Under the pieces are notes generated by a model. That model did no database searches and was not told the DNA's origin. It saw only the letters and a list, made by a program, of their open reading frames with translations. The position numbers were made by a program, and so were the translations under genes. Positions 627-63,070 of a stretch of DNA of 64,000 nt are shown here, piece after piece (the stretch's first letter is position 1; each line of letters starts with the position of its first letter). The DNA lies in IMG/VR virus record IMGVR_UViG_3300048121_001678, positions 1 through 64,000 of that record, one strand, 5' to 3'.

Positions 627-995
627 CTAATCTATATCAGAATCTAACGTTCTACTGTCTATAGTATTATTTACCTCGATTGCAATGTTTGGGATATACT
701 TATCTAAGTTCACTTCAATTTCAGCAATTACATTATCATAATCACTTCTGTCACTGTTAACGTATAAATCAACATATAATACAGGTACCTCATCATTAAC
801 ATAATTGGTAACCACTATTTTATCTATTGACGTAATTTCGTTTAATTCATCCATTTCTCCTAAACCCATTTCAAAAGCCATGTCCTGAATCCTTTCTAAT
901 GATAAATTAACTAAAAGTTGTATACTATCTAACATGGTAGATTCATTAATCTTCATCATTGATGTTATTCGTGATATTTCTGTGATTAAACTCAT
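627..995 (-). CDS. Hypothetical acidic protein (LITE/KINE leader)
   Basis: 122-aa ORF; TATTTAT motif just upstream at 1001-1007 on the minus strand. Confidence 0.75.
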   Translation of the reverse strand: MSLITEISRITSMMKINESTMLDSIQLLVNLSLERIQDMAFEMGLGEMDELNEITSIDKIVVTNYVNDEVPVLYVDLYVNSDRSDYDNVIAEIEVNLDKYIPNIAIEVNNTIDSRTLDSDID

Positions 996-1042
996 ATGTA
1001 ATAAATATACCTTTTAAAGTATTTATTATAAAACAATACGAC

Positions 1043-1576
1043 ATGAAAGATAATCTATTAAATGAAGAGTTAAGTATTATGAAATCACTATTCACCCATC
1101 AGAGAGGTGTGGTTATTTCAGAACAAGAAAATGTTACTCAACCCGACGACGAATTAAATAAAGTTTTATCACCTGTAGGGATAAAACTAACACCTGAGGA
1201 ATCAGAAGAAGCACATCAAGATTGTCCTATCGATATGCCTTCTGATGAAAAGGAAGCTGGCTTTGTTAAGCAGATATTAAATAACTTAAAAGGAATGAGT
1301 ATACCTGAATTAGTTAAAGAATTAAAAGGTGTACTAAGAATTAAGGATAAACCCATCGAAGAACAAGCAGGAGCATTGGCAACAATTATGATTGCAGGTG
1401 TTGCCGTTCCAACTGTTATTGCTGTTGGTATTGCAGCCATCATAATAATTGCTATTATCAGTGCAATTGCCAGTAAGATAAAAAGTAAAGGTAAGAGACC
1501 TAAAAAGTCATCGTGTGGTAAAAGAAGAAAATTAGTGCGTAAGTTTGGTGTGAGTGGTAACTTTATGAAACTATAA
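1043..1576 (+). CDS. Hypothetical protein with C-terminal transmembrane segment and basic tail
   Basis: 177 aa; long hydrophobic run ALATIMIAGVAVPTVIAVGIAAIIIIAIISAIA followed by a K/R-rich tail; TATTTAT at 1020-1026. Confidence 0.75.
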   Translation: MKDNLLNEELSIMKSLFTHQRGVVISEQENVTQPDDELNKVLSPVGIKLTPEESEEAHQDCPIDMPSDEKEAGFVKQILNNLKGMSIPELVKELKGVLRIKDKPIEEQAGALATIMIAGVAVPTVIAVGIAAIIIIAIISAIASKIKSKGKRPKKSSCGKRRKLVRKFGVSGNFMKL

Positions 1577-1600
1577 ATTAAAATATATTTATTGAAACAC

Positions 1601-1628
1601 AAAACCCCTCGATTGAGGGGTTTTTTTA
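1601..1628. terminator. Bidirectional intrinsic terminator
   Basis: aaaacccctc-gatt-gaggggttttttt hairpin between convergent genes. Confidence 0.8.
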
Positions 1629-1708
1629 TTTAGAGTCCTGTGTGGATAACGTTTCCATATTATTAACCACACAACGTTTCTTTTAAATCAGTATTTTTTA
1701 TTAATTAT

Positions 1709-1918
1709 CTAATTATTGTAGAATACCATAGTATCACTCAAATCAATTTTAGGGTTGATATCAAATGTTTCATCTCTCGGGATATCCATAATATGTGGTA
1801 CATCTTGCAACACATCTACAGTTTCTAAAATTGCAGTATGGATTGAGTCTATTACTATAAACAATATGACTACAATGAGTAACCAATTAAAGACTTTTGT
1901 TGTTTGTTTTTTATTCAT
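1709..1918 (-). CDS. Small membrane protein
   Basis: 69 aa with an N-terminal hydrophobic helix. Confidence 0.6.
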   Translation of the reverse strand: MNKKQTTKVFNWLLIVVILFIVIDSIHTAILETVDVLQDVPHIMDIPRDETFDINPKIDLSDTMVFYNN

Positions 1919-1927
1919 TTCTTTTAT

Positions 1928-2389
1928 CTAAAAATTCCCCTCACCCACTTGTAAACAGGTCAATCCATTGTCTCTCCACATCCTAACCACCTTATCTCGG
2001 TCATCAAAAACACAAAGTATTTCTTCTTTTTTGGGAAATAGTTGGTCCAACCAACGTTTTTTTAATTGGTCATCGGGCATGTACATAAACTCTTTACTCG
2101 TTGGTCTCATTTTTAAAACATCAAATGGTACCCCGAACTCTTTCAACCATTCCATAGTAACCTCCTTAGTTCCTTTACTTCTACCACTTAAGATTATAAT
2201 CATATGACCCTCAGATTTCATCATCTTAGTCATTTCAATAATCGGTGTGTTAGGTAAATCTAACTGAATATTCTTTGGGTCAAAGAAGATTTCCCAATTA
2301 ATTTTACCATCTTCTTTTGTTGATAACTCTCTTCGTTTATCAATTAATGCTAGTGTACCGTCTAAATCAAATATTACTTTTTTCTTCAT
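1928..2389 (-). CDS. HAD-family phosphatase (T4 PseT/PNK 3'-phosphatase-like domain)
   Basis: Motifs IFDLDGTLA, IILSGR, LKMRP and VFDDRDKVVRMWRDNGLTCLQV. Confidence 0.85.
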   Translation of the reverse strand: MKKKVIFDLDGTLALIDKRRELSTKEDGKINWEIFFDPKNIQLDLPNTPIIEMTKMMKSEGHMIIILSGRSKGTKEVTMEWLKEFGVPFDVLKMRPTSKEFMYMPDDQLKKRWLDQLFPKKEEILCVFDDRDKVVRMWRDNGLTCLQVGEGNF

Positions 2390-2688
2390 TACATCATTTG
2401 TGTTAACAGGAACGCTAATTTATACCCTCCAAAAGCACCTAATGCTGTTGGTACTGGAAATACTATAAACTTTCCTAAACTTGTTACATACTTAGGTCTA
2501 TTAACTACCCTCCCTAAAAAGAAGTAGTAAACCATATATCCTAATAATACTAATATATCAACTCTCTCTGCAATAAACACTACTAAAATGGCACCAAGTA
2601 GTCCAAATATAAAGTTATCTACAACCGCCGATGATAATTCTGCCCTATCCGTTTGTCTAAACTCTTCTTGTATTTTTTTAATGCTCAT
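2389..2688 (-). CDS. Small multi-pass membrane protein
   Basis: 99 aa with three hydrophobic segments; start overlaps the next gene's stop/start. Confidence 0.7.
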   Translation of the reverse strand: MSIKKIQEEFRQTDRAELSSAVVDNFIFGLLGAILVVFIAERVDILVLLGYMVYYFFLGRVVNRPKYVTSLGKFIVFPVPTALGAFGGYKLAFLLTQMM

Positions 2689-2711
2689 CTTTTTTGGTAT
2701 ATAATTTTACC

Positions 2712-2933
2712 TTACAGGTCAAAGTTTTCTTTAAGTTCCTTGATTAAAGTTTTAATCTCTTCTTTATTAAGGGCGATGTGAGTGAAGAGGTCTTCTTGAC
2801 TTCTCATTGTTAATTGAAGTTTCATACCCTCTTTACCTCCACTGAATCTTGTTAGTGACATTTCAGTGTTCTCCATTTCATTTGTCTTTTGACTATGAAA
2901 TTGACCTTTAAGCGATTTTAATTCGGTTGACAT
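2712..2933 (-). CDS. Hypothetical protein
   Basis: 73-aa ORF; TATATTTG promoter-like element at 2959-2966 on the minus strand. Confidence 0.65.
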   Translation of the reverse strand: MSTELKSLKGQFHSQKTNEMENTEMSLTRFSGGKEGMKLQLTMRSQEDLFTHIALNKEEIKTLIKELKENFDL

Positions 2934-2981
2934 AAACTTTATTTTATTAATTAGAATACAAATATAAAGTTTTTTTACTTA

Positions 2982-3350: not shown

Positions 3351-3352
3351 CT

Positions 3353-3607: not shown

Positions 3608-3615
3608 AGTTTTAT

Positions 3616-4002: not shown

Positions 4003-4024
4003 TTATTGTTAAAGTTCTCATAAG

Positions 4025-4843: not shown

Positions 4844-4849
4844 TTGTTT

Positions 4850-4927
4850 TTAATCTTCAGAGAACTTAGGCTCAGAATATACATCACTATCGTAAAAGTC
4901 TACGAAGTCTTCAAATTGGTCATCCAT
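4850..4927 (-). CDS. 25-aa acidic micro-protein MDDQFEDFVDFYDSDVYSEPKFSED
   Basis: Translated by hand; fills the gap between a terminator and the next gene and has an A/T-rich leader. Confidence 0.45.
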   Translation of the reverse strand: MDDQFEDFVDFYDSDVYSEPKFSED

Positions 4928-5565: not shown

Positions 5566-5586
5566 TTTCGTTTTTATTTTAATTTA

Positions 5587-7615: not shown

Positions 7616-7627
7616 TATTTATAATCT

Positions 7628-9705: not shown

Positions 9706-9729
9706 ACTAATAAATACTTCATAATATTA

Positions 9730-10032: not shown

Positions 10033-10059
10033 AGTATTTATAATTAATACTTCAATTAT

Positions 10060-12725: not shown

Positions 12726-13025
12726 CTATTTTCCAATAACTAAATCAGAGTAGTCTAATTTTTCCATACCTGTTAATTCTTCCTCAACCTCATCATACAT
12801 ATAAGCTTTAACTACGGCAACTACGCCCTGTTCAGCTTGAGCCAATTTACTTTCCATCCAATCTTCGATTTGCTCTCCGTCTTCCATCATTTCCCACATC
12901 TTATATGCTAATGTGGCGATGGTGAATAGTTGTTGTTTAGCCATATACGACCCGTCATGTTTTCCTTCTGTCAAGGAAGCTGTCAACCTTTCCAATTGTG
13001 CTTCTGTAAGAATAATTTGTCCCAT
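12726..13025 (-). CDS. Hypothetical protein, probably virion-associated (start re-set to MGQIILTE)
   Basis: TATTTAT at 13045-13051 lies inside the longer ORF call, which favours the downstream ATG; IILTEAQL leader. Confidence 0.7.
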   Translation of the reverse strand: MGQIILTEAQLERLTASLTEGKHDGSYMAKQQLFTIATLAYKMWEMMEDGEQIEDWMESKLAQAEQGVVAVVKAYMYDEVEEELTGMEKLDYSDLVIGK

Positions 13026-13154
13026 ATTTTGTTTACCTTTGTTTATAAATATCACGTAATTAAAAAAGGTGAGGATTACTCCCCACCTTTTTGAGGCCGA
13101 CCTGGCTAATAGTCGTCGGCAACTCCACCACCCTATTTCATCTAATAGGGAAAT

Positions 13155-14121: not shown

Positions 14122-14182
14122 ATTTATTTCTTTTGTATATACAAATATAATAAATATATTTCACTATAACAACTATAGGCAT

Positions 14183-15092: not shown

Positions 15093-15173
15093 CAAATCTA
15101 ATACTTTAATTTTAGACTGTCAAATAAACTTTTAAGAATTTCTGATTTTTTTCAGTAGGGTAAGATATAAATA
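15093..15173 (-). promoter_or_regulatory. Candidate promoters of the large ncRNA
   Basis: TAGATTTG (Bacteroidota TAnnTTTG type) at 15093-15100 and TATTTAT at 15167-15173. Confidence 0.5.
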
Positions 15174-15878: not shown

Positions 15879-15906
15879 ATTATATAATCTTCATATATTT
15901 ATTACT

Positions 15907-16263: not shown

Positions 16264-18453
16264 TTGACTAAGTACTGTTGAGGTTTCAATTCCAACAATG
16301 CCGTCATCCTCAATCTTATTATCTTTTTGAACCTTTTTAATCGACTCTCTTGTTTTTGACCCAAAACGACCGTCAACACCGTCTTTATTCGGACCAAAGT
16401 CTCCAAGGTCATAACCATTATCCACTAATATCTGCTGAATCTCTTCAACACCTTTACCTCTTGAACCTAAAGATATTAACTCACTATTGTCACCATTACT
16501 AATAATATCTGCAATTGTTAAATCTTGTTTTACGACATTTTTTTCTTTCTTATATTCATCGTCTTTAAGTTCTATGTTGGAGACGTGTAAATGATGCTTA
16601 TGACTACCATCTGGCATAAACCATAGAACCGCTCTTTTGTGTTTACCTTCACTATTTCTATTATAACCTAATGACTCTAATGCCGAACATAATCTATCAC
16701 CCGCACTAATAAAACCTTCTCTGTTATTTCTATACGATGAAAGTTTTTTCTCATTAGGGTTATTTAAGTCTTGAAGTTTCGAAATATCTATAGCCCTTTC
16801 AATATGGTGTCTACTTACTTTACCTCCTTTAGTATTCTTACCATGACCCGTTTTAGCCCAGCTTAGTTCTGCATTTACATTTGCAATTTCAGCGGCCACA
16901 CCAATATCATTAATTAGTTCTTCAGGTAAATAATCATTCTTCGCCCTTCTACTAACAAATAAGTTAGGTGAAATTTCATCACCTACCCTCATCATATTTT
17001 CTGTTACTATTTTTTTAGTTTTTTTTTTAAAAGACTCTTTCAAATTTTTTGAACCCTCAATCTTTTCTTTAAGCTTTCTATAGAATTCTTCTCCAATCAT
17101 CTTAGAGAATTTAACGTATGGTGCATCACCTGAATCTTTATTGTATTTGTACTTACCTTGTGGTGGTCTCTTACTCCTACCGAAATAATTAAGTGCAGCA
17201 ATGTTAGTAATACATTTGTGACCACCTGAGTTAGCCTGTATCATTTCCCAAGCCGGAACACCTAAACCATCTAATAAACTCATCTCATCGTCAGTTAACT
17301 TACTGAATGGTTTATCCATTATCGCCTTTAAGTTTTCCATATACTTTTCTCCACCTTCCATAGACTTAATCTTATCACCGTAGAATGCTTCTAAATCTGC
17401 GTTTGTAAAACCTACAGACTCCTCACCAAAACTCTTTGATGACTCAGAAATCCATTTGATTGTTGATAATGGTATAATCTTTTCTCTTAGTTTAGATTCC
17501 CACTTACCCAATACTTCCTGTGCGATATCACCTAAGTTAACACCTTTAAGTTCTCTCTCACCCTTAAAAGGATTACAAGACGCTTGTACCAATCCCATCG
17601 GCCAAACCGTAATAAGGAAATCAGCATCGGGATGTAATTTAAATGGTGTATACCTATCGTATGAACCTGGTTTAAACATTCTACCACCACCGTATTGATA
17701 AAGAATACCATCTTTATAACTTAACTTAGGGTCCTTACTTCTTTGGTCAACATAGTCCTCTTGATTCGCAGACATCATCAACGCATTTGCATAGTTTTCT
17801 CTATCAGCTATTCTCCTAATATTTTGGAATATGTTTAATAAGGATGGTTTTGAAGTCATAACTAACTCCTCCATAAAACCTGGTTTGTTTTTATAAGCCA
17901 ACATAAGTTTGTTTGCCGCCAAACCTAACGCCATCTTATTTTTCTGTAGTGATTTGTCTTTATCTAACTTAAAGATAAAGTTCATAATGTCCTGTGGCTT
18001 TAAACCATACTTAGCAAAGTCGGCAGAATCAACCGTTGATATTAATCTAATGTCATCAGCAGTAAAAATATCTTTAGGTGACATTATCTGTGATAGTGTT
18101 TCAACATTTGAACGTGAAGACCTAAATGAGGTTGATGTATCACCCTCAACTCCACTCTGTGAATCGTGGTGGTCAGTGTGAACAACAAACATTGGCTTTC
18201 CATGTGCAAAATCAACTAACACTGGCATTGTATCTCCTTGAGCATCTTGTTTCTTCACTGCAAATTCCTTATCACCATATTGGATAATCTCACTATCAAC
18301 AACTTTAATACCGTTATTTTCTAAATAGTTCTTCATTGCTAATGCAGTTGTAACCCCATCTAAATCCTGATGAAAGTATATTTTAGCCTTTTTATATCTC
18401 TTGGATAGGTCATTTATATTACGTAGACCAGACTCGTTAATTAACTTTTTCAT
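16255..18453 (-). CDS. Fusion: DHH-family phosphoesterase + M15-like peptidase + peptidoglycan-binding domain
   Basis: HQDLDG, VDFAH, TDHHD and SGGH (DHH/DHHA1); SRH...AIDI...HHLHVS (M15-like); LGSRGKGVEEIQQIL...DGRFGSKT...DDGIVGIET (PG-binding). Confidence 0.7.
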   Translation of the reverse strand: MKKLINESGLRNINDLSKRYKKAKIYFHQDLDGVTTALAMKNYLENNGIKVVDSEIIQYGDKEFAVKKQDAQGDTMPVLVDFAHGKPMFVVHTDHHDSQSGVEGDTSTSFRSSRSNVETLSQIMSPKDIFTADDIRLISTVDSADFAKYGLKPQDIMNFIFKLDKDKSLQKNKMALGLAANKLMLAYKNKPGFMEELVMTSKPSLLNIFQNIRRIADRENYANALMMSANQEDYVDQRSKDPKLSYKDGILYQYGGGRMFKPGSYDRYTPFKLHPDADFLITVWPMGLVQASCNPFKGERELKGVNLGDIAQEVLGKWESKLREKIIPLSTIKWISESSKSFGEESVGFTNADLEAFYGDKIKSMEGGEKYMENLKAIMDKPFSKLTDDEMSLLDGLGVPAWEMIQANSGGHKCITNIAALNYFGRSKRPPQGKYKYNKDSGDAPYVKFSKMIGEEFYRKLKEKIEGSKNLKESFKKKTKKIVTENMMRVGDEISPNLFVSRRAKNDYLPEELINDIGVAAEIANVNAELSWAKTGHGKNTKGGKVSRHHIERAIDISKLQDLNNPNEKKLSSYRNNREGFISAGDRLCSALESLGYNRNSEGKHKRAVLWFMPDGSHKHHLHVSNIELKDDEYKKEKNVVKQDLTIADIISNGDNSELISLGSRGKGVEEIQQILVDNGYDLGDFGPNKDGVDGRFGSKTRESIKKVQKDNKIEDDGIVGIETSTVLSQLK

Positions 18454-18454
18454 A

Positions 18455-19258
18455 TTATATCTCTTTATAAAAATCGTGGTTACCTATTGTTTTAACCAAT
18501 TTAAATTTTTCTTTATTGTTCCACCAATCATTATCATCAGTAGCTCGCTTTTTATTAACATAATGGGTTGCACCACCAATATCTATAGTTGAATCATTAT
18601 TCACTATAGATAAAAAATCACCCAACTCACTTTTCTTCACACCTAATTTACCTTGATTACATCTTGGGTTACTACCAAACCCTTTATCATTCCAATAAGA
18701 AAATTGTTTAGGTCTAAGTGCTTCACCAGCCATTCTTGCTTTCAATGAAAGACTTGAATCACCATTCCTAAGACCCCTATTTTTTAATATGGTATAAACC
18801 GCTTTCATACCTTCGTTACTCTCACCTCTAGCTTCACCCCATAGTGTGGCAGCTAAAATATCCTCGTTAGAATAATATGCGTTATATCTATCAGGGTCCT
18901 CAATTAATGAAATTGTCTTTTTACCCAACGCAGAACCATCAACATCACGTGAACATGATTGTGATTTATAAAAGTTACTAATAGCCTCGGCAGTTTTACC
19001 ACCATAGTAACCTAATAACCCATCCCACTTAAGGTACCCTAAGTCCTTTAATTTTTTTTGAATTTTAATAATACCTGAGTTAGGGTTTGAATTACAATAC
19101 CCTTTCTTTATTACCTGACCATTTTTTAAATCTTCATAAGTAACTAACTCATCTTCTTCTTTACCCTCAGGGCAAGGACTTTTTTTAGTTTGTTCAGACA
19201 AACCATAAAGTTTAAAAATGTCGTTCTTTTCTGACTCAGTAATAATAAAACGTGGCAT
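18455..19258 (-). CDS. PG-binding domain + SleB-type cell wall hydrolase
   Basis: IIKIQKKLKDLGY...GYYGGKT; AATLWGEARGE, PKQFSYWN, GATHY and IGNHDFY. Confidence 0.85.
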   Translation of the reverse strand: MPRFIITESEKNDIFKLYGLSEQTKKSPCPEGKEEDELVTYEDLKNGQVIKKGYCNSNPNSGIIKIQKKLKDLGYLKWDGLLGYYGGKTAEAISNFYKSQSCSRDVDGSALGKKTISLIEDPDRYNAYYSNEDILAATLWGEARGESNEGMKAVYTILKNRGLRNGDSSLSLKARMAGEALRPKQFSYWNDKGFGSNPRCNQGKLGVKKSELGDFLSIVNNDSTIDIGGATHYVNKKRATDDNDWWNNKEKFKLVKTIGNHDFYKEI

Positions 19259-19300
19259 AAAATACTTTTAATATAAATATAACAAACAACAAAAAACCCC

Positions 19301-22302: not shown

Positions 22303-23907
22303 TTATTCAACTCTATACACAAAATACGTCGTATTGTTAACATCAGCCTCGTTTTCTAACCCATCATAAGGACCTAAAGATGGTCCTGTACCATCCATAT
22401 CAATAGCGTCTTCGACTAAACTATCAATATCAACATAATCTTCTAATGATAACCCCCAATCTCTCATATGTGATATAATATCTCTCTCCACATCATAAAG
22501 TCTATCCTCTAAAACTTCTTCAACCATCCCAACAGTTGGTTCACCTTCAGGGTCATTCTTTATATCTTCAATTTCATCATTTATTTCGTTCCATCTATCT
22601 TCAGCTAACTCTACCTCATCTTCATTATATACACCATCTACGTTTCTAGTTATTTCATCTAACTCCTCAGCCTCTTCTTCTAGTTTGGACACTTGATGTT
22701 CCTGTTTATCTGAAAGTGGTAAGTCACTTTCATCAAAGTAACTCTCAGGTGATTCATAAATATCAGACTCGAACAATTCACTGAAGTACTCAAGAACACT
22801 AGTTGTATCAATATGACTTTCGACAAAAGATTGGTTCCAACCCTCTAATCCTATATCATCTATTAAGTTTCTTTGGTCTTCTATTGCCGCTTCACGCACC
22901 TCATCCCAATCTCCAACTGCCCATGTACTATTTTGAAAGTCAAGACCTAACCACTCAAATGTGTCCAATCCGGAATGTGGATAGTCTGCAGGTACTAAAT
23001 CATATATTGTTTCATCATCATCTAAGGATAAACCGTAATTATCTACAATCACCTCAAAAACTGCATTAGCTTTATTCGACTCTTCAGTGTCTTCATCTAT
23101 TGACCATTCATTACCATTTTTCCTATCTTGAGCATCACGTAGTTTTCTAGCGTTTCTCTCTCTTTGTTGTTGGTTACGAATCCTAACCATCTCTAATCTA
23201 GCAGCCTCTTTATCTTTGAATATTTCAAGTTCTCGTTCAAAATTGTCTTTGAGGTATTTTTGTATATTACTATTAATTTTTTCCCATTCAGGGGTACCTA
23301 ATATCCATTCATTAGTAAACGCCCTGTCGGGTGCATCGAAAAACACTTGGTCTCCATGATATTTTTGAAGTAGAGCTACTTTGTAAAATCTATCCTGACT
23401 CTTTGCTTTCTTATCAATAATATAAAACAACTTCCCATCACGATTATAAGTGTCAAAATGTGACGAACCTTGTTTGGATGCAGTACACCACTTAGTCCCT
23501 GCACCGTAGTAACAAGAGGCGTCATGAGTTTCAGGTGTTACAACTACAAACCTTTCGTCTTCATATACTTGTTTGGCACCATCAAGTTCTTTAACGTCTC
23601 TCCTAACTTTATTCTCATGAGCATCAATTGCTGTTTGTATATCTGATATCTTGTCATATAAATAAATGTCTTTAACAGGTAATACTTTTTGATATTTAAT
23701 AAAGTTACCGATAACCTCTTTAACTTTATTAATATCTATATTACCACTTTCTAACGCGTTACCTAAGAACATTAAATATTTGTGGTTGGACGCTAGGTCT
23801 CTAGAAAGTAAGAATATACTTTTCAGTTCATCGTTGGTAAACTTCTCTCTAAACTTTTTTAGGAAGTCATCCTTTCTTCCTTCTACTAATAACTGACTTA
23901 ATTGCAT
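22303..23907 (-). CDS. PcfJ-like/WCT-motif protein with acidic C-terminal region (start re-set to MQLSQLLVEG)
   Basis: ASCYYGAGTKWCTAS...FDTY...GKLFYII; TATTTAT at 23923-23929 favours the downstream ATG. Confidence 0.65.
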   Translation of the reverse strand: MQLSQLLVEGRKDDFLKKFREKFTNDELKSIFLLSRDLASNHKYLMFLGNALESGNIDINKVKEVIGNFIKYQKVLPVKDIYLYDKISDIQTAIDAHENKVRRDVKELDGAKQVYEDERFVVVTPETHDASCYYGAGTKWCTASKQGSSHFDTYNRDGKLFYIIDKKAKSQDRFYKVALLQKYHGDQVFFDAPDRAFTNEWILGTPEWEKINSNIQKYLKDNFERELEIFKDKEAARLEMVRIRNQQQRERNARKLRDAQDRKNGNEWSIDEDTEESNKANAVFEVIVDNYGLSLDDDETIYDLVPADYPHSGLDTFEWLGLDFQNSTWAVGDWDEVREAAIEDQRNLIDDIGLEGWNQSFVESHIDTTSVLEYFSELFESDIYESPESYFDESDLPLSDKQEHQVSKLEEEAEELDEITRNVDGVYNEDEVELAEDRWNEINDEIEDIKNDPEGEPTVGMVEEVLEDRLYDVERDIISHMRDWGLSLEDYVDIDSLVEDAIDMDGTGPSLGPYDGLENEADVNNTTYFVYRVE

Positions 23908-23932
23908 GTCTAATATTTTACTATAAATACTT

Positions 23933-24778: not shown

Positions 24779-24856
24779 TATTTCAAAAACTTAAAGATTA
24801 AAACAAAAGGAGATTAATTCTCCTTTTTTTTGTATTTATAGTAAATTAACATTACA

Positions 24857-38634: not shown

Positions 38635-38677
38635 CGTTATATATAAATAGTTTAAGTAATTTAAATTTAAATTTTAA

Positions 38678-43677: not shown

Positions 43678-43806
43678 TAAATGTTAAAATATATAGGTTT
43701 ATAGTAATAAATATTACAGAATCAATTTCTTAACAATAAATACATGTCAAGTCTTTAAGATGTGATTTAATTTTAATATAATTTCATAAAATAAGTTTAA
43801 GAAAAT

Positions 43807-50944: not shown

Positions 50945-51005
50945 TTTTATTTGTCTTATCTTAACACTACAAATATATACAAATAAGTTAGACAAATACA
51001 ACCCT

Positions 51006-54985: not shown

Positions 54986-56299
54986 TTATTTTGAAATAAA
55001 AACACCCTGTTCTGCTAACTTCTCAACCGCTTCAGGAATTTGTAGTTGATTATTACCTTGAATGTTAATTACTTTCAAGTTCGGAAGTAACGCGACCTCT
55101 TCAGGAATTGTCTTTAAGTTTGGGTTATTAGGAATTGAAAGGAACTGTAAGTTCTCCAATTGACCAATAGACTTTGGAAGTGATTTTAATATACCTTCAA
55201 AGTGTAGAGCCATCAAGTTTTTATAATCACCCAATTCTTCAGGAATGTCTAAAGCTAAATCAGTAACAGCTTCACTTCTGTAACCTCCACTCGATTTTGT
55301 AAAATCAAAAGAACTAATATCTTTTGGTAAGCTTTGGAACAACTCATCAAACCCATATAGTGCAACATACTTAGATGCCGCATCTCTTGGGTAATCAATG
55401 TTCACCTTCTTACCGTCCATTGAAGTCATTCCTTTTGAAAACTCAGGTTTAAATGTTTCTTTTAACTCAGGGTTATCATTTAAGAACTTAACCAAATCAA
55501 TCTGACGGTCATTGATGTCCATAAACTGATTTGATGGGAAGTGGAATTGGTATCTTTCTTTTGGGAGACCCGTCTTCTCAGCACTTTCATCACTATTTTT
55601 CAAAACAACATATAATGGACCTTGTTTGATGTAGGTATTAAAATAACTTAAACCAGGTGCCGATGTACACCATCTTGTCTCTTTATTATAACCACCAAAG
55701 AAACACGCCGCATCCTTACCTAACTGTCCTTGGTCATCAATTCTAACTACTGACCATTCAGAACCTTTATATACTGGGTCAGAGCCAGGATAATCAAAAG
55801 TCTTAGCCGCCTCCTTCTTGTCTTCTTTAGTACCTTTTGTTTTCTCCAATGAGAAATCTTTTACCAACTCAAACAATGAGTCAATACCAAGTTTATTGAT
55901 GTCTCTTTTTTCTCTATCTATCTGTCTTTTGAAACGGTCAAACTTCTCTAAGTCTTCAGTAGTCTTATACAAATCCTCGAAGAACGTATTTTGCATCGAC
56001 GTAAGTTCACCCTTATAAGCTGGTGTACCATACTCGGCATTACTCTCAGCCTTCTGGTTTAACTTATTGTATTGTTTCAATAACCATTGAACGTATGTAC
56101 CCGCTTTCTTGATTTTATCCCCATCTCTACGAGTTGTAGGGTCAGCCAAAACCAACTCATCAAATTTCTCTAAAGACATTCTTGGTGGGATAACTTTATC
56201 ATCCTTTTTCTTTGGCTTAGTGAAACGGTCTTTCAAGAGCTCATATCTCCCTTGCTCTAAAATTACGTTTCTTACTATGTTACTAAACTTAATTGCCAT
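54986..56299 (-). CDS. WCT-motif (PcfJ-like) protein with C-terminal leucine-rich repeats
   Basis: AACFFGGYNKETRWCTSAP...FNTY..QGPLYVV; LRR LKSLPKSIGQLENLQFLSIPNNPNLKTIPEEVALLPNLKVINIQGN. Confidence 0.75.
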   Translation of the reverse strand: MAIKFSNIVRNVILEQGRYELLKDRFTKPKKKDDKVIPPRMSLEKFDELVLADPTTRRDGDKIKKAGTYVQWLLKQYNKLNQKAESNAEYGTPAYKGELTSMQNTFFEDLYKTTEDLEKFDRFKRQIDREKRDINKLGIDSLFELVKDFSLEKTKGTKEDKKEAAKTFDYPGSDPVYKGSEWSVVRIDDQGQLGKDAACFFGGYNKETRWCTSAPGLSYFNTYIKQGPLYVVLKNSDESAEKTGLPKERYQFHFPSNQFMDINDRQIDLVKFLNDNPELKETFKPEFSKGMTSMDGKKVNIDYPRDAASKYVALYGFDELFQSLPKDISSFDFTKSSGGYRSEAVTDLALDIPEELGDYKNLMALHFEGILKSLPKSIGQLENLQFLSIPNNPNLKTIPEEVALLPNLKVINIQGNNQLQIPEAVEKLAEQGVFISK

Positions 56300-56379
56300 A
56301 ATATTGTTTTTTACTATAAATATAGTCAGTTATTAAAAGATACTGCCTTAACACCCCACAAATATACAATAAAATTCAA

Positions 56380-57255: not shown

Positions 57256-57345
57256 ATTTCTTCGTTTTAAACAAATATAGTAAATAAAATTGTAAAAGGC
57301 AAATGTTATTAATAAAAAACCCCTCCGAAGAGGGGTCTTTTTTGG

Positions 57346-57558: not shown

Positions 57559-57603
57559 AGTTTTTTGTTTTATTATAAATATATTAATTATGCTAAATCA
57601 CCT

Positions 57604-58518
57604 TTATCGGTAACAGTCCTTATATGGTTTACAAGATGCCTTTTGTGAAAAACCCATATCTTTGCACGATGTCTTCTCACAATAAGATTTACTCATCTTA
57701 CCTTCAGTAATCTCAGTAATACCCTCTTTATATTTATCTTCAATATAATCCTTTATTTCATTAATAGTGGAATACAACATACTTAAGAAACTATTCCACT
57801 GTTTTGGATTATATCTCTTTAGTAACCCTAGTAAGTGAAGTACGTGAGGTAACTCTTTGTCATTAACCTCCTCAGATGATATACTATACATTGCCTTTTT
57901 AAAAATTTCATCACCCTGTCCACTCTTAGCAAAAAAGGATAATGCACTGTCTAAACTATCCATCAACTCTTGTTTTGTATATCTTCCAACCATCTCTTTA
58001 TATTCATTAACCAATCCCTCCAGTACCTCATTTGCATACGCTCTGAATTCAAATGGGTGCCCATAATACTTCTCTGTGTCTGATGGATTATAATCCCCAA
58101 TCTTTTTTTGTGAAATCTTTGATGTGGTATTCAAATCCATTAAATGTTGCACCTCATGGTATAATAAATTATAAATTGACTTTCTTGATGGAACCATAGA
58201 TTCTTCCGGATTAATCACAATAAATACATTATATAGATTTCTCTCTTTATTGTTATTGATTGGAAATACCGCTGCCTGATTTTCAAGCTCACTCAAATAG
58301 TATACAGGTACCATTGAGTAATCACCTGTCGAATCTTCAACATAAATTTGACCCTTTTTAGGGTTCTCATCATCTTTATTCTTCCAGGCATTAAAAAGTA
58401 TATCAGACATATACTCTAAATCAGATTTAGTTCTAGGGTGTAGTTTAACCCTTTTAGAGGTCTCAACTATTAAATTTTCTCTATACTCTCTTAAAACTTT
58501 TCTTATTATATTTTCCAT
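57604..58518 (-). CDS. Putative zinc-metallopeptidase-like virion protein
   Basis: YHEVQHLMD (HExxH) followed by EFRAYANE; Cys-rich tail YCEKTSCKDMGFSQKASCKPYKDCYR. Confidence 0.6.
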   Translation of the reverse strand: MENIIRKVLREYRENLIVETSKRVKLHPRTKSDLEYMSDILFNAWKNKDDENPKKGQIYVEDSTGDYSMVPVYYLSELENQAAVFPINNNKERNLYNVFIVINPEESMVPSRKSIYNLLYHEVQHLMDLNTTSKISQKKIGDYNPSDTEKYYGHPFEFRAYANEVLEGLVNEYKEMVGRYTKQELMDSLDSALSFFAKSGQGDEIFKKAMYSISSEEVNDKELPHVLHLLGLLKRYNPKQWNSFLSMLYSTINEIKDYIEDKYKEGITEITEGKMSKSYCEKTSCKDMGFSQKASCKPYKDCYR

Positions 58519-58549
58519 AACACTATAATTATACTATTATAAATATACT

Positions 58550-60638: not shown

Positions 60639-61047
60639 CTTCTTCCTCTAATTTTGTTTCTAATTCTAATGTGGTGTTTTCGTTAATTTCAAAAATTAAT
60701 CGTTTTAACTCATTCACATCCTTTGACTCAAACATACTTTTCAATTCTTGAATTTTATGTTTAAATAATTTTTCCTTTTCCTCTTTTTCTTGATTGTACT
60801 TAATAACACCATTAATACAGTTCTCAACCTCATTTACTAAGTTAACCTCATTTTTAACAACAAAAGAATAAAGTCTAAAATTAGGTCTATCACTATTGTC
60901 CTGAGTTAAAACTTCAATGTTCTTGGTATACTTCTTAGGTATACCCCATGAATCTTTGAAATATATGTCGAAAGATATGAAATCTTTTAAATATCTTAAC
61001 GATTTGAGGTATTGTTTAGTTTCTTCTGTAAAATTTGAAAAAATCAT
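60553..61047 (-). CDS. Hypothetical coiled-coil protein
   Basis: 164-aa ORF. Confidence 0.65.
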   Translation of the reverse strand: MIFSNFTEETKQYLKSLRYLKDFISFDIYFKDSWGIPKKYTKNIEVLTQDNSDRPNFRLYSFVVKNEVNLVNEVENCINGVIKYNQEKEEKEKLFKHKIQELKSMFESKDVNELKRLIFEINENTTLELETKLEEEDGQESTGNGELASEGENQRQERGEEVEG

Positions 61048-61241
61048 ATTAACGATATAATATATGTTATCACGTAACTGAAAAATAACCCATTAATGAG
61101 TAATTCTCTGTTGGTTAAATTTAATGGTTTAGGTGGGTCGGATAATAAGGAACTAATGAAGTTAACAATAGTCCTTATTATACCCAACAATGAAAAAATG
61201 AATATGAATGTACTAAAGTATGTTAGTAATTCTATAATCAT
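61044..61241 (-). CDS. Small membrane protein
   Basis: 65 aa with two hydrophobic helices. Confidence 0.65.
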   Translation of the reverse strand: MIIELLTYFSTFIFIFSLLGIIRTIVNFISSLLSDPPKPLNLTNRELLINGLFFSYVITYIISLI

Positions 61242-61414
61242 TATAGTGTTTTTTTGTGTTCAAGAATTTCACCTCTTAAATCTTGTAATAATGATTTTAA
61301 TTCTTGTGCTGTTTTTCTAGCTCTAGTACCCGCAGATTTATTACCTGCAAAAAATTTGTTAGCATCTAATGATAATGTTTCAACGTGTGCTTTGATTGTT
61401 TCTAATGTCTCCAT
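61241..61414 (-). CDS. Histone H1-like (Hc1 family) protein (start re-set to METLE)
   Basis: DANKFFAGNKSAGTRARKTAQELK motif of the Bacteroidota Hc1-like family. Confidence 0.75.
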   Translation of the reverse strand: METLETIKAHVETLSLDANKFFAGNKSAGTRARKTAQELKSLLQDLRGEILEHKKTL

Positions 61415-61490
61415 TTTAATTTTAATTTTAATTTTTTTATTACTCAAAATGTAATTTTTATGTGCTGATAGTAAAGCCAAACCATAAAAA

Positions 61491-61973
61491 TTAATTTTGT
61501 AATGACCTCTCTAAAACCTTATACATGTCAGTATACATTTCAATATCTGACTTAGTAAAGATTCTATTCATGTCAAAAAGTTGTGTTAAGAAGGGTTCTA
61601 TTGATTCTCTAACTTCCACATCTCTTTGGTCATAATATACTTCAAAAAAGAAACTTTCAAAATAATCGTAGTCATTATTCTTAAACTTAAATCTTATATT
61701 TTCTTTTTCAAAATTAGTGATTGTCTTAATCCAACACCATTCAAAATGACCTTTTTTATCTTCATAAGACATACTTATATTAGTTTCTCTACCATTGGTA
61801 TTAATCTCCCCAAGATATGTCTCCTCTATAAGGTATAGTAGCGAAAAACAAAAGTCCTCAAACAATTCTGAATACTCTTTTTGTATATTGTGTGCGCGGA
61901 ACCATAAATCCACATCTGATTTATCCATAGGCTTTGTTACCCAATTAAAAAAAAAGTCCATCCCTTCTTTCAT
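61491..61973 (-). CDS. Hypothetical protein
   Basis: 160-aa ORF. Confidence 0.7.
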   Translation of the reverse strand: MKEGMDFFFNWVTKPMDKSDVDLWFRAHNIQKEYSELFEDFCFSLLYLIEETYLGEINTNGRETNISMSYEDKKGHFEWCWIKTITNFEKENIRFKFKNNDYDYFESFFFEVYYDQRDVEVRESIEPFLTQLFDMNRIFTKSDIEMYTDMYKVLERSLQN

Positions 61974-62020
61974 ATAAGAAAGATAAGATGGACTTCTTTA
62001 AAAGAAATATTAAAGTTTTT

Positions 62021-63040
62021 TTACTGTGTTTTAAAGTTATGACCTAATAATGATTTCATTCTATCGATATCCTCATTAATTTTCTTTTGTGACTTATCCT
62101 CAGTTCCTTCAGACAATGCTGACATCACTTCGTCAGGTGACATTGCCGCCTTATCACTTTTAGATTTACCAGCCACATCCTCTACAGGTTGTACTGCTTT
62201 GTTGTAAGATTGTTTCTTCAACTTAGCTAGCCAATTCTTCTTACGTCTGTCGTTAACCTTTTCGTTAGCATCAGTAGCAACCGCATTTGCATATTCCTGT
62301 GAGTTACCTGTCTTTGAATCACCTAAGATGTTCATTTCAATCCAATCTTCGTTAGGTTTTATAGCATCATAATCCAAGTTTTCCATACCACCCGAACGAG
62401 CAATTTGGTCAATATACTCTTCAACTGCGTCAGATGCGTGGTACTTCATACTCAAGTCCTCACCCATTTCACCATTTCCTTTAGGGAAATCTTTAGGGTC
62501 TTCTTCATAACCTTCGTTAGAACCCGCTTTAACGTAGTCTTTCATTTTTTTGTTAACGTCCTTCATTGCTTCGTCGTTAACCTTCTTAGAATCTTTCAAT
62601 ACTTTTTCAGTATCTTTCATTCCTTTAGCTTCTTTTTCTTCCATAACCAGTCTTTGGATAAGTTCAACCATTTCTGATTCAGTAAGTGTTATGGTCTTTT
62701 TAGTTGACTCATTAACTTCATCTTCCTCTCCTTTAACTGGAAATTTTTTACCATCAACCTCAAAAGAATCTTCACCCTTCTTAATTGCTTCGTCTCTCGC
62801 GCCACTGAAAGCGTTTCCTTCTTCCATTTCCTCTTCGTCCATTTCTTCTTCCATACGTTGTTTTTTGATGTCTGAATCGACACCTACAACTTCAGAATCA
62901 CGTCCGTCAAACTCGTCTCTTTCTTCAGGCATTTTACCCATGTCTTCTGAAACCGCATCAACAGCTTCTTCTACTTTTTTTGACAATTCTTCATTTAAGA
63001 CCTTGTCAACAATTTTATTTATAGTTTTTTCAATATTCAT
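62021..63040 (-). CDS. Acidic probable head/core (scaffold-like) protein
   Basis: E/D/K/M-rich with several [ILV]xE sites (VLNEE, TLTESE, KINE); TATTTAT at 63057-63063. Confidence 0.6.
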   Translation of the reverse strand: MNIEKTINKIVDKVLNEELSKKVEEAVDAVSEDMGKMPEERDEFDGRDSEVVGVDSDIKKQRMEEEMDEEEMEEGNAFSGARDEAIKKGEDSFEVDGKKFPVKGEEDEVNESTKKTITLTESEMVELIQRLVMEEKEAKGMKDTEKVLKDSKKVNDEAMKDVNKKMKDYVKAGSNEGYEEDPKDFPKGNGEMGEDLSMKYHASDAVEEYIDQIARSGGMENLDYDAIKPNEDWIEMNILGDSKTGNSQEYANAVATDANEKVNDRRKKNWLAKLKKQSYNKAVQPVEDVAGKSKSDKAAMSPDEVMSALSEGTEDKSQKKINEDIDRMKSLLGHNFKTQ

Positions 63041-63070
63041 AATATTTCTTTTTATAATAAATATACGTGA

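What the first reader, a model, noticed from the sequence alone, without database searches (positions are those of the whole stretch)
627..63063. Two promoter classes; TATTTAT marks genes whose products carry [ILV]-x-E leaders (putative head-packaged cargo)
Seen: sense-strand TATTTAT lies shortly upstream of many starts (1001, 1020, 7616, 9710, 10035, 13045, 15896, 19273, 23923, 24833, 38643, 43707, 56316, 57575, 58539, 63057). TAnnTTTG precedes a different set (2959, 14142, 15093, 50970, 57272). Many TATTTAT-class proteins begin with an unrelated-looking leader ending in I/L/V-x-E: LITE, LLNEE, IILTE, IITESE, LLVE, VILEQ, VLRE, VLNEE. Established: TAnnTTTG is the Bacteroidota housekeeping -7 element, and T4-like prohead proteases cleave after [IL]-x-E. 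TATTTATA is the reverse complement of the T4 late promoter TATAAATA. Inference: a late regulon plus a portable capsid-targeting propeptide that loads diverse enzymes into the head for ejection.
Basis: partly seen in the sequence, partly recalled or inferred. Interest (0 to 1): 0.65.

Follow-up and report, generated by a model that had tools for sequence, protein, structure and literature searches.

The report
T4-like late promoter and capsid-targeting leaders
A 297-kb marine phage of Bacteroidota, distantly related to T4, drives its virion genes from a TATTTAT(A) promoter, and about twenty unrelated proteins made from it carry a short N-terminal tag that probably sends them into the phage head, as in T4; the idea is known, but this clade and these signals are new.

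Summary
The window is the first 64 kb of a 297-kb distant T4-type jumbo phage from seawater.

**TATTTAT promoter.** Sense-strand TATTTAT is the most enriched 7-mer upstream of starts: 82 copies against 15.7±4 in composition-matched shuffles. It is strand-specific and sits at fixed spacings from the ATG (-11/-12 and -20 to -27). It has no -33 element. It is conserved in 80 related viral contigs and in the cultured Flavobacterium phage immuto. It heads the sheath, portal, prohead protease, scaffold/capsid and fibre genes. PolB and the ribonucleotide reductase genes lack it.

**TAnnTTTG promoter.** A smaller class, often with TTTG about 20 bases upstream, fits the host sigma-A promoter. It heads the ClpP, Clp-ATPase-like, Dam and HNH genes and a GOLLD RNA.

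**Leaders.** About 17 otherwise unrelated proteins share an N-terminal leader of about 22 residues (MKK-h-h-x-LTESDL...h-h-x-E). All 17 lie in TATTTAT transcription units.

**Head-module context.** The genome encodes a T4 gp21-family prohead protease. The capsid protein's Glu60 (LINE|A) aligns with T4's known cleavage glutamates.

**Verdict.** The late-regulon reading is well supported. The capsid-targeting propeptide is the best explanation but unproven, because no cleavage or packaging data exist. I rate it a new variant of a known kind (T4 late promoter plus T4 capsid-targeting sequence).

The parts
131..137 (+). TATTTAT box, 59 nt upstream of leader gene 190-579
1001..1007 (-). TATTTAT box, -12 from ATG of 627-995 (leaderless-type spacing)
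1020..1026 (+). TATTTAT box, -23 from ATG of 1043-1576; divergent partner of the box at 1001
7616..7622 (+). TATTTAT box, -12 from 7628-8923 (DUF6878 protein)
9710..9716 (-). TATTTAT box, -11 from 8920-9705
10035..10041 (+). TATTTAT box, -25 from 10060-10950
13045..13051 (-). TATTTAT box, -26 from leader gene 12726-13025
14142..14156 (-). Overlapping TATTTAT (14150-14156) and TATATTTG (14142-14149) upstream of 13846-14121
15896..15902 (+). TATTTAT box, -11 from 15907-16263 (DUF192)
19273..19279 (-). TATTTAT box, -21 from the two-gene unit 18455-19258 and 16255-18453 (both leader proteins)
23923..23929 (-). TATTTAT box, -22 from the internal ATG at 23907, the likely true start of 22303-23907
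24833..24839 (+). TATTTAT box, -24 from 24857-25831
38643..38649 (-). TATTTAT box, -15 from collagen-repeat fibre gene 34687-38634 (30629-34687 follows with no gap)
43707..43713 (-). TATTTAT box, -36 from collagen-repeat fibre gene 38818-43677
56316..56322 (-). TATTTAT box, -23 from 54986-56299 (LRR protein)
57575..57581 (-). TATTTAT box, -23 from the 70-aa ORF 57346-57558
58539..58545 (-). TATTTAT box, -27 from 57604-58518
63057..63063 (-). TATTTAT box, -23 from 62021-63040
2959..2966 (-). TATATTTG (-7 box of host sigma-A type, with an upstream TTTG), -33 from 2712-2933
15093..15124 (-). TTTG (15121-15124), a 20-nt spacer, then TAGATTTG (15093-15100): sigma-A-type promoter of the GOLLD RNA
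50970..50977 (-). TATATTTG, -33 from a 38-codon ORF starting at 50944
57272..57279 (-). TATATTTG, -24 from Dam methylase gene 56380-57255
190..261 (+). Leader MKKYLITREQLDNLVANFLDE of the 129-aa protein 190-579
   Evidence: profile hit 9e-8 at Met1
924..995 (-). Leader MSLITEISRITSMMKINE of the 122-aa protein
1043..1114 (+). Leader MKDNLLNEELSIMKSLF of the 177-aa protein (second motif flavour, matched by eye only)
12954..13025 (-). Leader MGQIILTEAQLERLTASLTE of the 99-aa protein
   Evidence: profile hit 2e-6 at Met1
18382..18453 (-). Leader MKKLINESGLRNINDL of the 732-aa protein with a C-terminal PG_binding_1 domain
19187..19258 (-). Leader MPRFIITESEKNDIFKLYGLSE of the 267-aa SleB-type cell-wall hydrolase
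23881..23907 (-). Short N-terminus MQLSQLLVE (h-h-x-E only; not a profile hit)
56252..56299 (-). N-terminus ending NVILE (E15); weak candidate, pattern only
58486..58518 (-). N-terminus MENIIRKVLRE; weak candidate, pattern only
62636..62701 (-). Internal leader-like copy (TITLTESEMVELIQRLVMEE, aa 114-135) in protein 62021-63040; its N-terminus also ends KVLNE (E17)

Best explanation
The window belongs to a 297-kb T4-superfamily jumbo phage of a marine Bacteroidota host, probably Flavobacteriia.

**Transcription (partly inferred).** The phage uses two promoter types.
1. Host sigma-A promoters, TTTG-N19/20-TAnnTTTG, drive auxiliary and host-takeover genes and a GOLLD RNA.
2. A -10-only box, TATTTAT(A/T)(A)..AAA, drives virion genes. 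By analogy with T4 late promoters, host RNA polymerase probably reads it with a phage sigma-region-2-like factor. The candidate is ORF 200184-200939. The box sits about 5 nt before the transcript start. Genes with the box at -11/-12 would therefore give leaderless mRNAs, and the rest would give 5' UTRs of about 10-15 nt.

**Leader proteins (inferred).** About 17-22 late proteins with unrelated bodies carry an N-terminal module. It has h-h-[TNS]-E at residues 6-10, then an amphipathic helix, and usually a second h-x-E at residues 18-23. The most likely role is that of the T4 capsid-targeting sequence. It docks the protein onto the scaffold core of the prohead, and the gp21-type protease then removes it after Glu. 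The mature cargo stays inside the head and leaves with the DNA.

**Shown:** the motifs, their statistics and conservation, the T4-type protease and capsid protein, and the aligned capsid cleavage site.
**Inferred:** timing, the sigma assignment, cleavage, packaging and ejection.
For: **Promoter.**
- Enrichment and strand bias are strong.
- Spacing to the ATG is sharply bimodal.
- There is no -33 TTTG in 95 of 101 sites, whereas 10-12 of 29 TAnnTTTG sites have one at -23/-24.
- The box is present at heads of units and absent before 160 closely packed internal genes.
- It is conserved in 80 IMG/VR relatives, with 308 of 447 copies at -30 to -11.
- It is conserved in cultured Flavobacterium phage immuto upstream of terminase, portal and fibre genes, and in a more distant T4-like contig.

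**Gene sets.**
- TATTTAT heads tail sheath, adaptor, portal, protease and scaffold (with the capsid gene behind it), and the collagen fibres.
- PolB, both ribonucleotide reductase subunits, an SNF2 helicase and glycosyltransferases have neither box.
- ClpP, a ClpB-like ATPase, Dam and an HNH nuclease are headed by TAnnTTTG.

**Sigma candidate.**
- Its only PHROG match is the T4 gp55 family.
- All top VIA-align rows are sigma region 2 (Z 8.9, rmsd 2.8 over 91 aa) or T4 gp55 chain 7d7c_F (Z 7.7, 125 aa).
- It is a core gene with at least 7999 close homologues.
- No phage RNA polymerase was found with Pfam models.

**Leader.**
- The profile finds 17 hits, 14 of them exactly at Met1 in a six-frame search. 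All 17 lie in TATTTAT units, against about 38% of genes overall.
- The protein bodies are unrelated.
- 12 of 12 hydrolase orthologues keep h-[ILV]-[TSN]-E at residues 6-9 while the linker varies.
- In an AlphaFold model the leader is a low-confidence helix apart from the globular domain.
- The capsid protein's Glu60 aligns with T4 gp23 E65 and gp24 E10, and LINE|A is invariant in 13 relatives.
- T4 head proteins begin in the same way: MEGLIE, MNEPQLLIE, MLKEQLIAE, MAKINELLRE.
- A leader protein occupies the gp67/gp68 position and keeps its leader in relatives.
- An 83-aa cargo is a lysine-rich basic protein, like the T4 internal proteins.
- The T4 capsid-targeting sequence is documented in PMC9026906.
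Against: - There are no transcription start sites and no time course. The metatranscriptome data are contigs and cannot show 5' ends.
- A UvsX-like recombinase gene also has TATTTAT.
- About 70 intergenic regions carry neither motif, so further promoter variants or classes are likely.
- The sigma assignment rests on weak sequence scores (E 3e-4 to 0.01; hhalign probability 3.5%) and on structural Z values in a range that helical folds can reach by chance.
- No gp45-type sliding clamp was found with phrog_223.
- There is no evidence of cleavage or packaging. The protease-leader complex prediction gave no answer.
- The leader is about 22 residues long and differs in sequence from T4's 10-residue sequence.
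Confidence: 0.55

Rival explanations
1. The promoter reading is right, but the shared N-terminus is an uncleaved docking or oligomerisation helix. It would attach varied late proteins to a common virion or assembly partner, as conserved N-terminal anchors of tail fibres do, without head internalisation or ejection.
For: - The motif is a 15-20 residue amphipathic helix, longer than a bare cleavage site.
- One internal copy exists at residue 114 of protein 62021-63040, and a leader-like match forms the last 22 residues of a reading frame at 160721-160939.
- No cleavage data exist.
Against: - The invariant feature across paralogues and orthologues is h-x-E at a fixed distance from Met1. That is the specificity of the gp21 family present in the genome.
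- T4 head proteins processed by gp21 start the same way.
- The cargo includes a lysine-rich small basic protein typical of internal head proteins.
Confidence: 0.2
2. TATTTAT is not a promoter. It is instead a 5'-UTR or translation-initiation element, or an RNA-processing site, of AT-rich Bacteroidota-type mRNAs that lack Shine-Dalgarno sequences.
For: - It lies very close to start codons.
- Bacteroidota use A-rich signals around the start instead of Shine-Dalgarno sequences (PMC6847099, listed).
Against: - 160 genes that follow their neighbour within 25 nt lack it, and it marks heads of gene runs, often just after terminators.
- Spacing ranges from -8 to -50 with two sharp modes.
- It is absent from the replication and metabolic genes, which must also be translated.
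- It has the size, composition and position of T4 late boxes, which in T4 begin 33-36 nt before the ATG.
Confidence: 0.07
3. The leader is an export or lysis-related signal. It would bring cell-wall-acting late proteins to the periplasm at the end of infection, not into the capsid.
For: Two leader proteins carry peptidoglycan-binding or SleB-type hydrolase domains and match endolysin families.
Against: - The leader is charged and amphipathic, with no hydrophobic span such as a Sec, Tat or signal-anchor sequence would have.
- Most leader proteins have no cell-wall domain.
- One sits in the prohead-core gene position.
Confidence: 0.05
4. The patterns are chance products of an AT-rich genome (TATTTAT) and of a proteome rich in I, L, K and E ([ILV]-x-E).
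For: - The raw window count is only modestly above shuffles, 53 against 38.
- [ILV]-x-E occurs in about a quarter of any 20-residue stretch.
Against: - Upstream-specific enrichment is 82 against 15.7±4, with a maximum of 30 in 1000 shuffles.
- Strand bias is 86 to 17.
- The pattern is conserved in relatives.
- Six-frame profile hits fall at Met1 in 14 of 17 cases.
Confidence: 0.03

Closest known systems
T4 late promoters (TATAAATA, read by gp55 with gp33 and the gp45 clamp)
   Same: - An AT-rich 7-8 bp box of -10 type with no -35 element and an A/T-rich stretch downstream.
- Placed a few tens of nucleotides before virion genes on either strand.
- The phage belongs to the T4 superfamily by portal, protease, capsid protein, sheath and terminase.
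- A sigma-region-2-like candidate factor is present.
   Different: - The consensus is TATTTAT(A), the central triplet TTT in place of AAA. It shares TA..T.T with the host -7 box TAnnTTTG.
- Many boxes lie so close to the ATG that the mRNAs would be leaderless.
- No gp45-type clamp was detected; gp33 was not searched for.
- The sigma candidate is 251 aa against 185 aa, and only marginally similar in sequence.
- In two full-text searches I found no paper reporting this consensus as a late promoter.
T4 capsid-targeting sequence of internal proteins IPI-III and Alt, and propeptides of gp24, gp67, gp68, gp22 and gp21
   Same: - N-terminal, portable, and found on unrelated bodies.
- Ends in hydrophobic-x-Glu.
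- A gp21-family protease is encoded nearby.
- One bearer sits between portal and protease.
- One bearer is a small, very basic protein.
   Different: - About 22 residues, with a conserved LTESDL-type helix and usually two candidate sites, against 10 residues in T4.
- About 17-22 bearers per genome, against a handful in T4.
- The cargo includes peptidoglycan hydrolase and binding proteins.
- Nothing has been tested experimentally.
Processed head and inner-body proteins of phiKZ-like giant phages (phiKZ gp175, SPN3US gp245)
   Same: Many head proteins per virion are cut after Glu by a distant gp21 relative, and propeptides carry redundant sites (PMC9026906).
   Different: - According to my own knowledge of the phiKZ literature, those phages use a small residue at P3 (S/A/G-x-E). 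They also carry virion RNA polymerases and their own promoters.
- Here P3 is I, L or V as in T4, and no phage RNA polymerase was found.
Bacteroidota sigma-A promoters (-33 TTTG, -7 TAnnTTTG)
   Same: The consensus, the spacing and the distance to starts all match for about 20-29 sites. The -7 box lies at -12 to -5 in Flavobacterium (PMC9723704).
   Different: None found; these look like ordinary host-type promoters used by the phage.

Membership tests
T4-type late promoter regulon | Short AT-rich -10-type box without a -35 element, strand-specific, upstream of virion genes | tested here: met
   for the motif, and 18, 19, 37, 85 for the gene set; the sequence differs (TATTTAT(A), not TATAAATA)
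T4-type late promoter regulon | gp55-family sigma factor encoded by the phage | tested here: inconclusive
   ORF 200184-200939: phrog_234 E 3e-4 and 0.008; hhalign probability 3.5%; structure matches sigma region 2 at Z 8.9 and gp55 chain 7d7c_F at Z 7.7
T4-type late promoter regulon | gp45-type sliding clamp and gp33 co-activator | tested here: not met
   phrog_223 found nothing at E<=1; gp33 was not searched; a divergent clamp is not excluded
T4-type late promoter regulon | Transcripts start just downstream of the box and appear late, dependent on replication | not testable with these tools
   only assembled metatranscriptome contigs were available
T4 capsid-targeting sequence / gp21-processed head proteins | gp21-family (Peptidase_S77) prohead protease in a T4-type head gene module | tested here: met
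   86.5 bits, E 2e-25, over the cut-off; gene order is terminase, portal, three small genes, protease, scaffold, capsid
T4 capsid-targeting sequence / gp21-processed head proteins | Capsid protein carries the conserved hydrophobic-x-Glu maturation site | tested here: met
   E60 in HLINE|AA aligns with T4 gp23 E65 and gp24 E10; invariant in 13 relatives
T4 capsid-targeting sequence / gp21-processed head proteins | Short N-terminal sequence ending in hydrophobic-x-Glu, shared by otherwise unrelated proteins | tested here: met
T4 capsid-targeting sequence / gp21-processed head proteins | Leader is cut off by the protease | not testable with these tools
   the complex prediction gave no answer; needs N-terminomics or an in vitro assay
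T4 capsid-targeting sequence / gp21-processed head proteins | Leader is sufficient to bring a protein into the head, and the cargo is ejected | not testable with these tools
   needs reporter fusions in a cultured relative
Bacteroidota sigma-A promoter | -7 box TAnnTTTG with -33 TTTG about 19-20 nt upstream, in sense before genes | tested here: met
   composite motif 8 sense against 1, with 0.7 expected; TTTG at -23/-24 in 10-12 of 29 sites

The most novel reading that the evidence does not exclude
The leader is a two-part capsid-targeting propeptide of about 22 residues: two protease sites flanking a docking helix. If so, the whole head-packaged, ejected protein set of a globally abundant clade of marine Bacteroidota jumbo phages could be read from sequence alone. 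That set would include peptidoglycan hydrolases delivered from the head rather than the baseplate. The clade would also have re-tuned the T4 late system to a TATTTATA box, partly resembling the host -7 element, that gives many leaderless mRNAs.
Probability: 0.35. Interest if true: 0.7.

Novelty: new variant of a known kind. Interest (0 to 1): 0.55.

Why it matters
- **Abundance of the clade.** This phage group is common in seawater. At least 598 related portal genes occur in IMG/VR. The stretch tested was held in 20 sequencing runs from 19 studies. The sigma candidate has at least 7999 close homologues.
- **Use of the promoter box.** A verified late-promoter consensus would let the virion gene set of these mostly unannotated genomes be predicted. 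Most proteins here match no family.
- **Use of the leader.** A verified targeting leader would define the proteins injected into Flavobacteriia at infection. These are candidates for anti-defence and cell-wall-breaching functions.
- **Practical tag.** It would also give a portable tag for loading proteins into phages of Bacteroidota, as the T4 sequence does for E. coli phage vectors.
- **Evolutionary reach.** It would extend the T4 capsid-targeting principle to a very distant branch of the T4 superfamily.

Tried and rejected
- **Megablast against cultured phages.** 14 kb of the window gave no match.
- **Bare regular expressions for the leader.** Enrichment was only modest, so I replaced them with an iterated profile.
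- **Complex prediction.** Protease with leader residues 1-40 scored 0.00 and gave no answer. It is evidence neither for nor against.
- **Sigma candidate against T4 gp55.** Profile-profile comparison was inconclusive at probability 3.5%. Plain Foldseek gave no hit better than E 0.14.
- **gp45 clamp family.** No match.
- **Pfam RNA polymerase families.** Rpb2_6, Rpb1_2 and the T7-type family gave no match. This argues against a phage RNA polymerase. The T7-type model rang in no control genome, and divergent phiKZ-type subunits could escape all three.
- **Metatranscriptome contigs laid on 13400-19399.** They show the GOLLD RNA but cannot give 5' ends or timing for TATTTAT units.
- **Pfam and PHROG scans of 20 leader proteins.** Most are of unknown function.
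- **Loose TAnnTTTG pattern.** Within 100 nt upstream of all genes it shows no strand bias, 42 against 37. Only intergenic copies, the TATATTTG form and the composite with TTTG are significant.
- **Not used.** The big representative-protein search was not used, because a 22-residue motif cannot reach significance there.

Full report
**What the window is.** The 64-kb window is the first part of a single 297,164-bp viral contig (IMG/VR record, CheckV completeness 99%).
- Its first and last 206 bp overlap at 96% identity.
- G+C is 34%, and a simple ORF call gives 331 genes covering 94%.
- No cultured phage is close at the DNA level.
- The head module is T4-type. It holds a Peptidase_S77 (gp21) prohead protease at 213433-214152 (E 2e-25) and a Gp23-family capsid protein at 209931-211661 (E 2e-62).
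- The portal is gp20-like. Its best cultured relatives are Microcystis phage Mel-JY01, Flavobacterium phage immuto and Rhodothermus phage RM378.
- A tail sheath gene is also present.
- The gene order is terminase, portal, three small genes, protease, scaffold, capsid. T4 has genes 20-67-68-21-22-23 in the same order.
- At least 598 related portal genes occur in IMG/VR.
- The stretch 12001-20000 is held in 20 runs from 19 studies, mostly seawater, marine, marsh and estuary metagenomes.
- The Bacteroidota-type promoters described below and the cultured Flavobacterium relative point to a Flavobacteriia-like host. That is an inference.

**TATTTAT: the observation.** All 16 listed sites exist on the stated strand and lie 11-36 nt upstream of an ATG.
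- Two sites correct my automatic gene calls. The site at 23923 precedes Met17 of ORF 22303-23955. The site at 57575 precedes the 70-aa ORF 57346-57558.
- Genome-wide, the 50 nt upstream of starts hold 82 sense copies against 31 antisense. Shuffles of the same upstream regions give 15.7±4.0, with a maximum of 30 in 1000.
- TATTTAT is the commonest and most enriched upstream 7-mer, at 15-fold.
- In intergenic DNA, 86 copies point towards a gene start and 17 do not.
- The extended consensus is TATTTAT-[A/T]-[A/g]-t-[a/t]-A-A-A.
The motif is real.

**TATTTAT: what it is.** Five features fit a promoter and do not fit a translation signal.
1. It marks heads of gene runs. 160 genes that follow their neighbour within 25 nt lack it.
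2. It often follows a terminator-like hairpin and T-run.
3. Its distance to the ATG has two sharp modes, -11/-12 and -20 to -27, in this genome and in relatives.
   - In Flavobacterium the sigma-A -7 box lies at -12 to -5 from the transcript start (PMC9723704).
   - In T4 the late boxes begin 33-36 nt before the ATGs of genes 20, 22 and 24.
   - If the phage box keeps the host register, the -11/-12 class would start transcription at the A of the ATG, giving leaderless mRNA. The other class would have 5' UTRs of about 10-15 nt. Both are inferences.
4. It has no -33 element. TTTG at the right distance occurs in 6 of 101 sites, against 10-12 of 29 for TAnnTTTG sites. T4 late promoters likewise lack a -35 element (PMC2988020).
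5. It is conserved.
   - In 80 related contigs, 308 of 447 copies near starts fall at -30 to -11.
   - In the cultured Flavobacterium phage immuto, (C)TATTTATA precedes terminase, portal, the next gene, a fibre gene and others.
   - In a more distant T4-like contig, it precedes both a gp13-like neck gene and a cell-wall hydrolase gene.

**Which genes each class heads.**
- **TATTTAT units.** These include tail sheath and a head-tail adaptor; portal, protease and a gp68-position gene; scaffold with the capsid gene 29 nt behind it; the three collagen-repeat fibre genes of the window; and most of the large structural block at 82-185 kb.
- **Neither box.** PolB, both ribonucleotide reductase subunits, an SNF2 helicase, glycosyltransferases and carbamoyltransferases have neither box.
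- **An exception.** A UvsX-like recombinase gene has TATTTAT.
- **Caveat.** About 70 intergenic regions have neither motif, so 'two classes' is a minimum.
- 'Late' is therefore an inference from gene content and from the T4 analogy, not a measurement.

**Who reads it.** No RNA polymerase subunit was found with Pfam models (see the caveats under tried and rejected). ORF 200184-200939 (251 aa) is the best candidate factor.
- Its only PHROG match is the T4 gp55 late sigma family (E 3e-4 in the genome search, 0.008 in the protein scan).
- BLAST gives a weak colinear alignment with T4 gp55.
- Its AlphaFold model (pLDDT 70.5) matches sigma region 2 in essentially all top VIA-align rows. SigmaE gives Z 8.9 and 8.8, with rmsd 2.8 over 91 residues. 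T4 gp55 from the late open complex, chain 7d7c_F, gives Z 7.7 over 125 residues.
- It is highly conserved, with at least 7999 close homologues.
- The sequence scores are weak and the Z values are in a range that helical folds can reach by chance, so I rate the assignment as probable only.
- No gp45-type clamp was detected.

**TAnnTTTG.** All five listed sites exist.
- The loose pattern is barely enriched. TATATTTG (17 sense against 3, with 3.5 expected) and the composite TTTG-N17-21-TAnnTTTG (8 against 1, with 0.7 expected) are enriched.
- The genes headed are a ClpB-like AAA+ ATPase, ClpP, an M42-like peptidase, an HNH nuclease, a HAD protein and Dam methylase.
- The site at 15093 is a textbook promoter: TTTG, 20 nt, TAGATTTG. 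It heads a GOLLD RNA, not a protein gene.
  - Rfam matches 14237-14644 at 295 bits.
  - A hairpin and T-run end it near 14183.
  - Metatranscriptome contigs cover 14228-15052 at word depths of about 200-9500, against about 2-18 in the flanks, in four runs.

**The leader: what is really there.** The bare [ILV]-x-E pattern is common. Within 10 residues it occurs in 27% of TATTTAT genes and 14% of the others (p=0.01). The stronger signal is a longer motif.
- An iterated profile from N-termini converges on M-K-K-h-h-(x)-L-T-E-S-[DE]-L-x-x-I-h-x-R-V-h-x-E. A second flavour is h-h-x-E-I-x-R-I-K-E-h-M-G-L.
- In a six-frame search of the whole genome it finds 17 hits. Fourteen start exactly at an ATG. 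One more starts at a GTG, and two align just after an ATG.
- Apart from one pair (286254 and 290279), the bodies of these proteins share no detectable similarity.
- All 17 lie in TATTTAT transcription units, directly or as the next gene. About 38% of all genes lie in such units.
- Typically there are two hydrophobic-x-Glu sites, with P1 Glu at residues 6-10 and again at 18-23.
LLNEE matches the second flavour by eye only. LLVE, VILEQ, VLRE and VLNEE fit only the short pattern and are weaker.

**Why a capsid-targeting propeptide is the best reading.**
1. The protease that cuts after hydrophobic-x-Glu in T4 has a clear homologue here.
2. The capsid protein's Glu60 in HLINE|AA aligns with T4 gp23 E65 (FLTE|AE) and gp24 E10 (LLRE|S).
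   - That gp21 cleaves gp23 and gp24 is stated in the T4 record and in PMC9026906. The exact residues are from my own knowledge of T4.
   - LINE|A is invariant in 13 relatives, while the residues after it vary.
3. T4 head proteins processed by gp21 begin much as these leaders do: MEGLIE, MNEPQLLIE, MLKEQLIAE, MAKINELLRE.
4. A leader protein (214191-214589, GTG start, TATTTAT at -21) sits between portal and protease, where T4 has the cleaved core proteins gp67 and gp68. Relatives keep its leader.
5. In 12 of 12 orthologues of the hydrolase 18455-19258, h-[ILV]-[TSN]-E is kept at residues 6-9 while the rest of the leader drifts between the two flavours. More distant homologues in another T4-like phage carry a different short h-h-x-E N-terminus.
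6. In an AlphaFold model of that hydrolase, residues 1-30 are a low-confidence helix plus linker. The confident globular part starts near residue 31.
7. One cargo (206549-206800, 83 aa) is a lysine-run basic protein whose basic part begins right after the second Glu, like the T4 internal proteins. Relatives show the same junction...ISE|KKKK.
8. The T4 precedent is that 10 N-terminal residues suffice to package foreign proteins. The literature itself suggests that this is a general way for T4-like phages to load varied proteins (PMC9026906).

**Cargo.**
- Recognisable domains are few: a SleB-type cell-wall hydrolase with a peptidoglycan-binding domain (18455-19258); a 732-aa protein with a C-terminal peptidoglycan-binding domain and a sub-threshold DHH match (16255-18453); an EF-hand/dockerin-like protein (69165-69809); and an Ant-like segment (62021-63040).
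- The rest match nothing.
- 'Diverse enzymes' is thus only partly borne out.
- Head-packaged wall hydrolases would make sense as ejection proteins. From my own knowledge, T7 gp16 is a precedent. This was not tested here.

**What is missing.** No tool here can show cleavage, packaging, ejection or timing. The one structural test of protease-leader binding gave no answer. The main rival is that the N-terminus is an uncleaved docking helix.

**Comparison and novelty.**
- The system works like T4's late regulon plus capsid-targeting sequences. The head-module features that define T4-type processing are met.
- It differs in box sequence (TATTTAT(A), not TATAAATA), in the many leaderless-type spacings, in leader length and sequence, and in the number of bearers.
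- Immuto has its own repeated N-terminal families: MKKSQLxxIIKEE, and xFDLKKFLVENKLT on four proteins. The principle therefore seems general in this branch while the sequences vary.
- Full-text searches for TATTTATA as a late promoter, and for T4-like phages of Flavobacterium or Bacteroidetes with late promoters or gp55, turned up no description of either signal in Bacteroidota phages.
- I rate it a new variant of a known kind.

Noticed in passing
window 14183-15088 (-): A full-length GOLLD RNA (Rfam RF02032, 295 bits over 14237-14644) lies in a 1.1-kb ORF-free gap. It has a textbook Bacteroidota sigma-A promoter (TTTG-N20-TAGATTTG at 15093-15124) and an intrinsic terminator near 14183. In four marine and estuary metatranscriptomes, contigs over 14228-15052 have word depths of about 200-9500, against about 2-18 in the flanks. 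A GOLLD RNA in a T4-like marine Bacteroidota phage, apparently very abundant in nature, deserves its own look.
   Followed up: partly
window 30629-43677 (-): Three tandem paralogous giant genes (1352, 1315 and 1619 aa) encode collagen triple-helix repeats followed by a Peptidase_S74 chaperone domain, and are probably fibres. Their Gly-rich repeats explain the local rise in G+C to 0.42-0.44. A PLOD-type collagen glycosyltransferase gene lies nearby at 52731-54611.
   Followed up: partly
window 48150-50708 (-), 5587-7188 (-), 45482-46612 (-): The phage encodes a TonB-dependent receptor (Plug plus beta-barrel, with a signal-peptide-like N-terminus), a sulfatase and a glutamine-synthetase-like protein. 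None is in a TATTTAT unit. These are unusual auxiliary genes for a phage.
   Followed up: no
genome 226131-228146 (+) and 275727-276386 (+) (L009:6131-8146, L011:15727-16386): A ClpB/ClpA-like double AAA+ ATPase and a ClpP protease are both driven by host-type TAnnTTTG promoters. The phage seems to bring its own Clp machinery.
   Followed up: no
genome-wide; window examples 1001, 7616, 9710, 15896: A sharp class of TATTTAT boxes begins exactly 11-12 nt before the ATG (18 genes here, 41 in relatives). This implies leaderless mRNAs that start at the AUG.
   Followed up: partly
contig ends: 1-206 and 296959-297164: The first and last 206 bp match at 96% identity, not 100%. This suggests a circular or terminally redundant genome assembled from a mixed population. 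The first window ORF (35-190) is the tail of the last genome ORF.
   Followed up: partly
genome about 160721-160939 (-), between the tail sheath gene and the next gene: A leader-like sequence (PQNVIISEEQLERLIEKLNNKK) forms the last 22 residues of a reading frame whose stop overlaps the next gene's ATG. It is the only strong profile hit that is not at an N-terminus.
   Followed up: no
L102 (Flavobacterium phage immuto, record 100801-141952): Immuto has its own repeated N-terminal families on different proteins. xFDLKKFLVENKLT occurs on four proteins, and MKKSQLxxIIKEE on about four. One of these proteins lies between portal and protease. Its protease begins MNNPLLINVTPFKGLLTE.
   Followed up: partly
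window 57346-57613: Two overlapping ORFs lie on opposite strands: 57346-57558 (-), with TATTTAT at -23, and 57383-57613 (+), with TACTTTTG at -36. Probably only one is a real gene.
   Followed up: no
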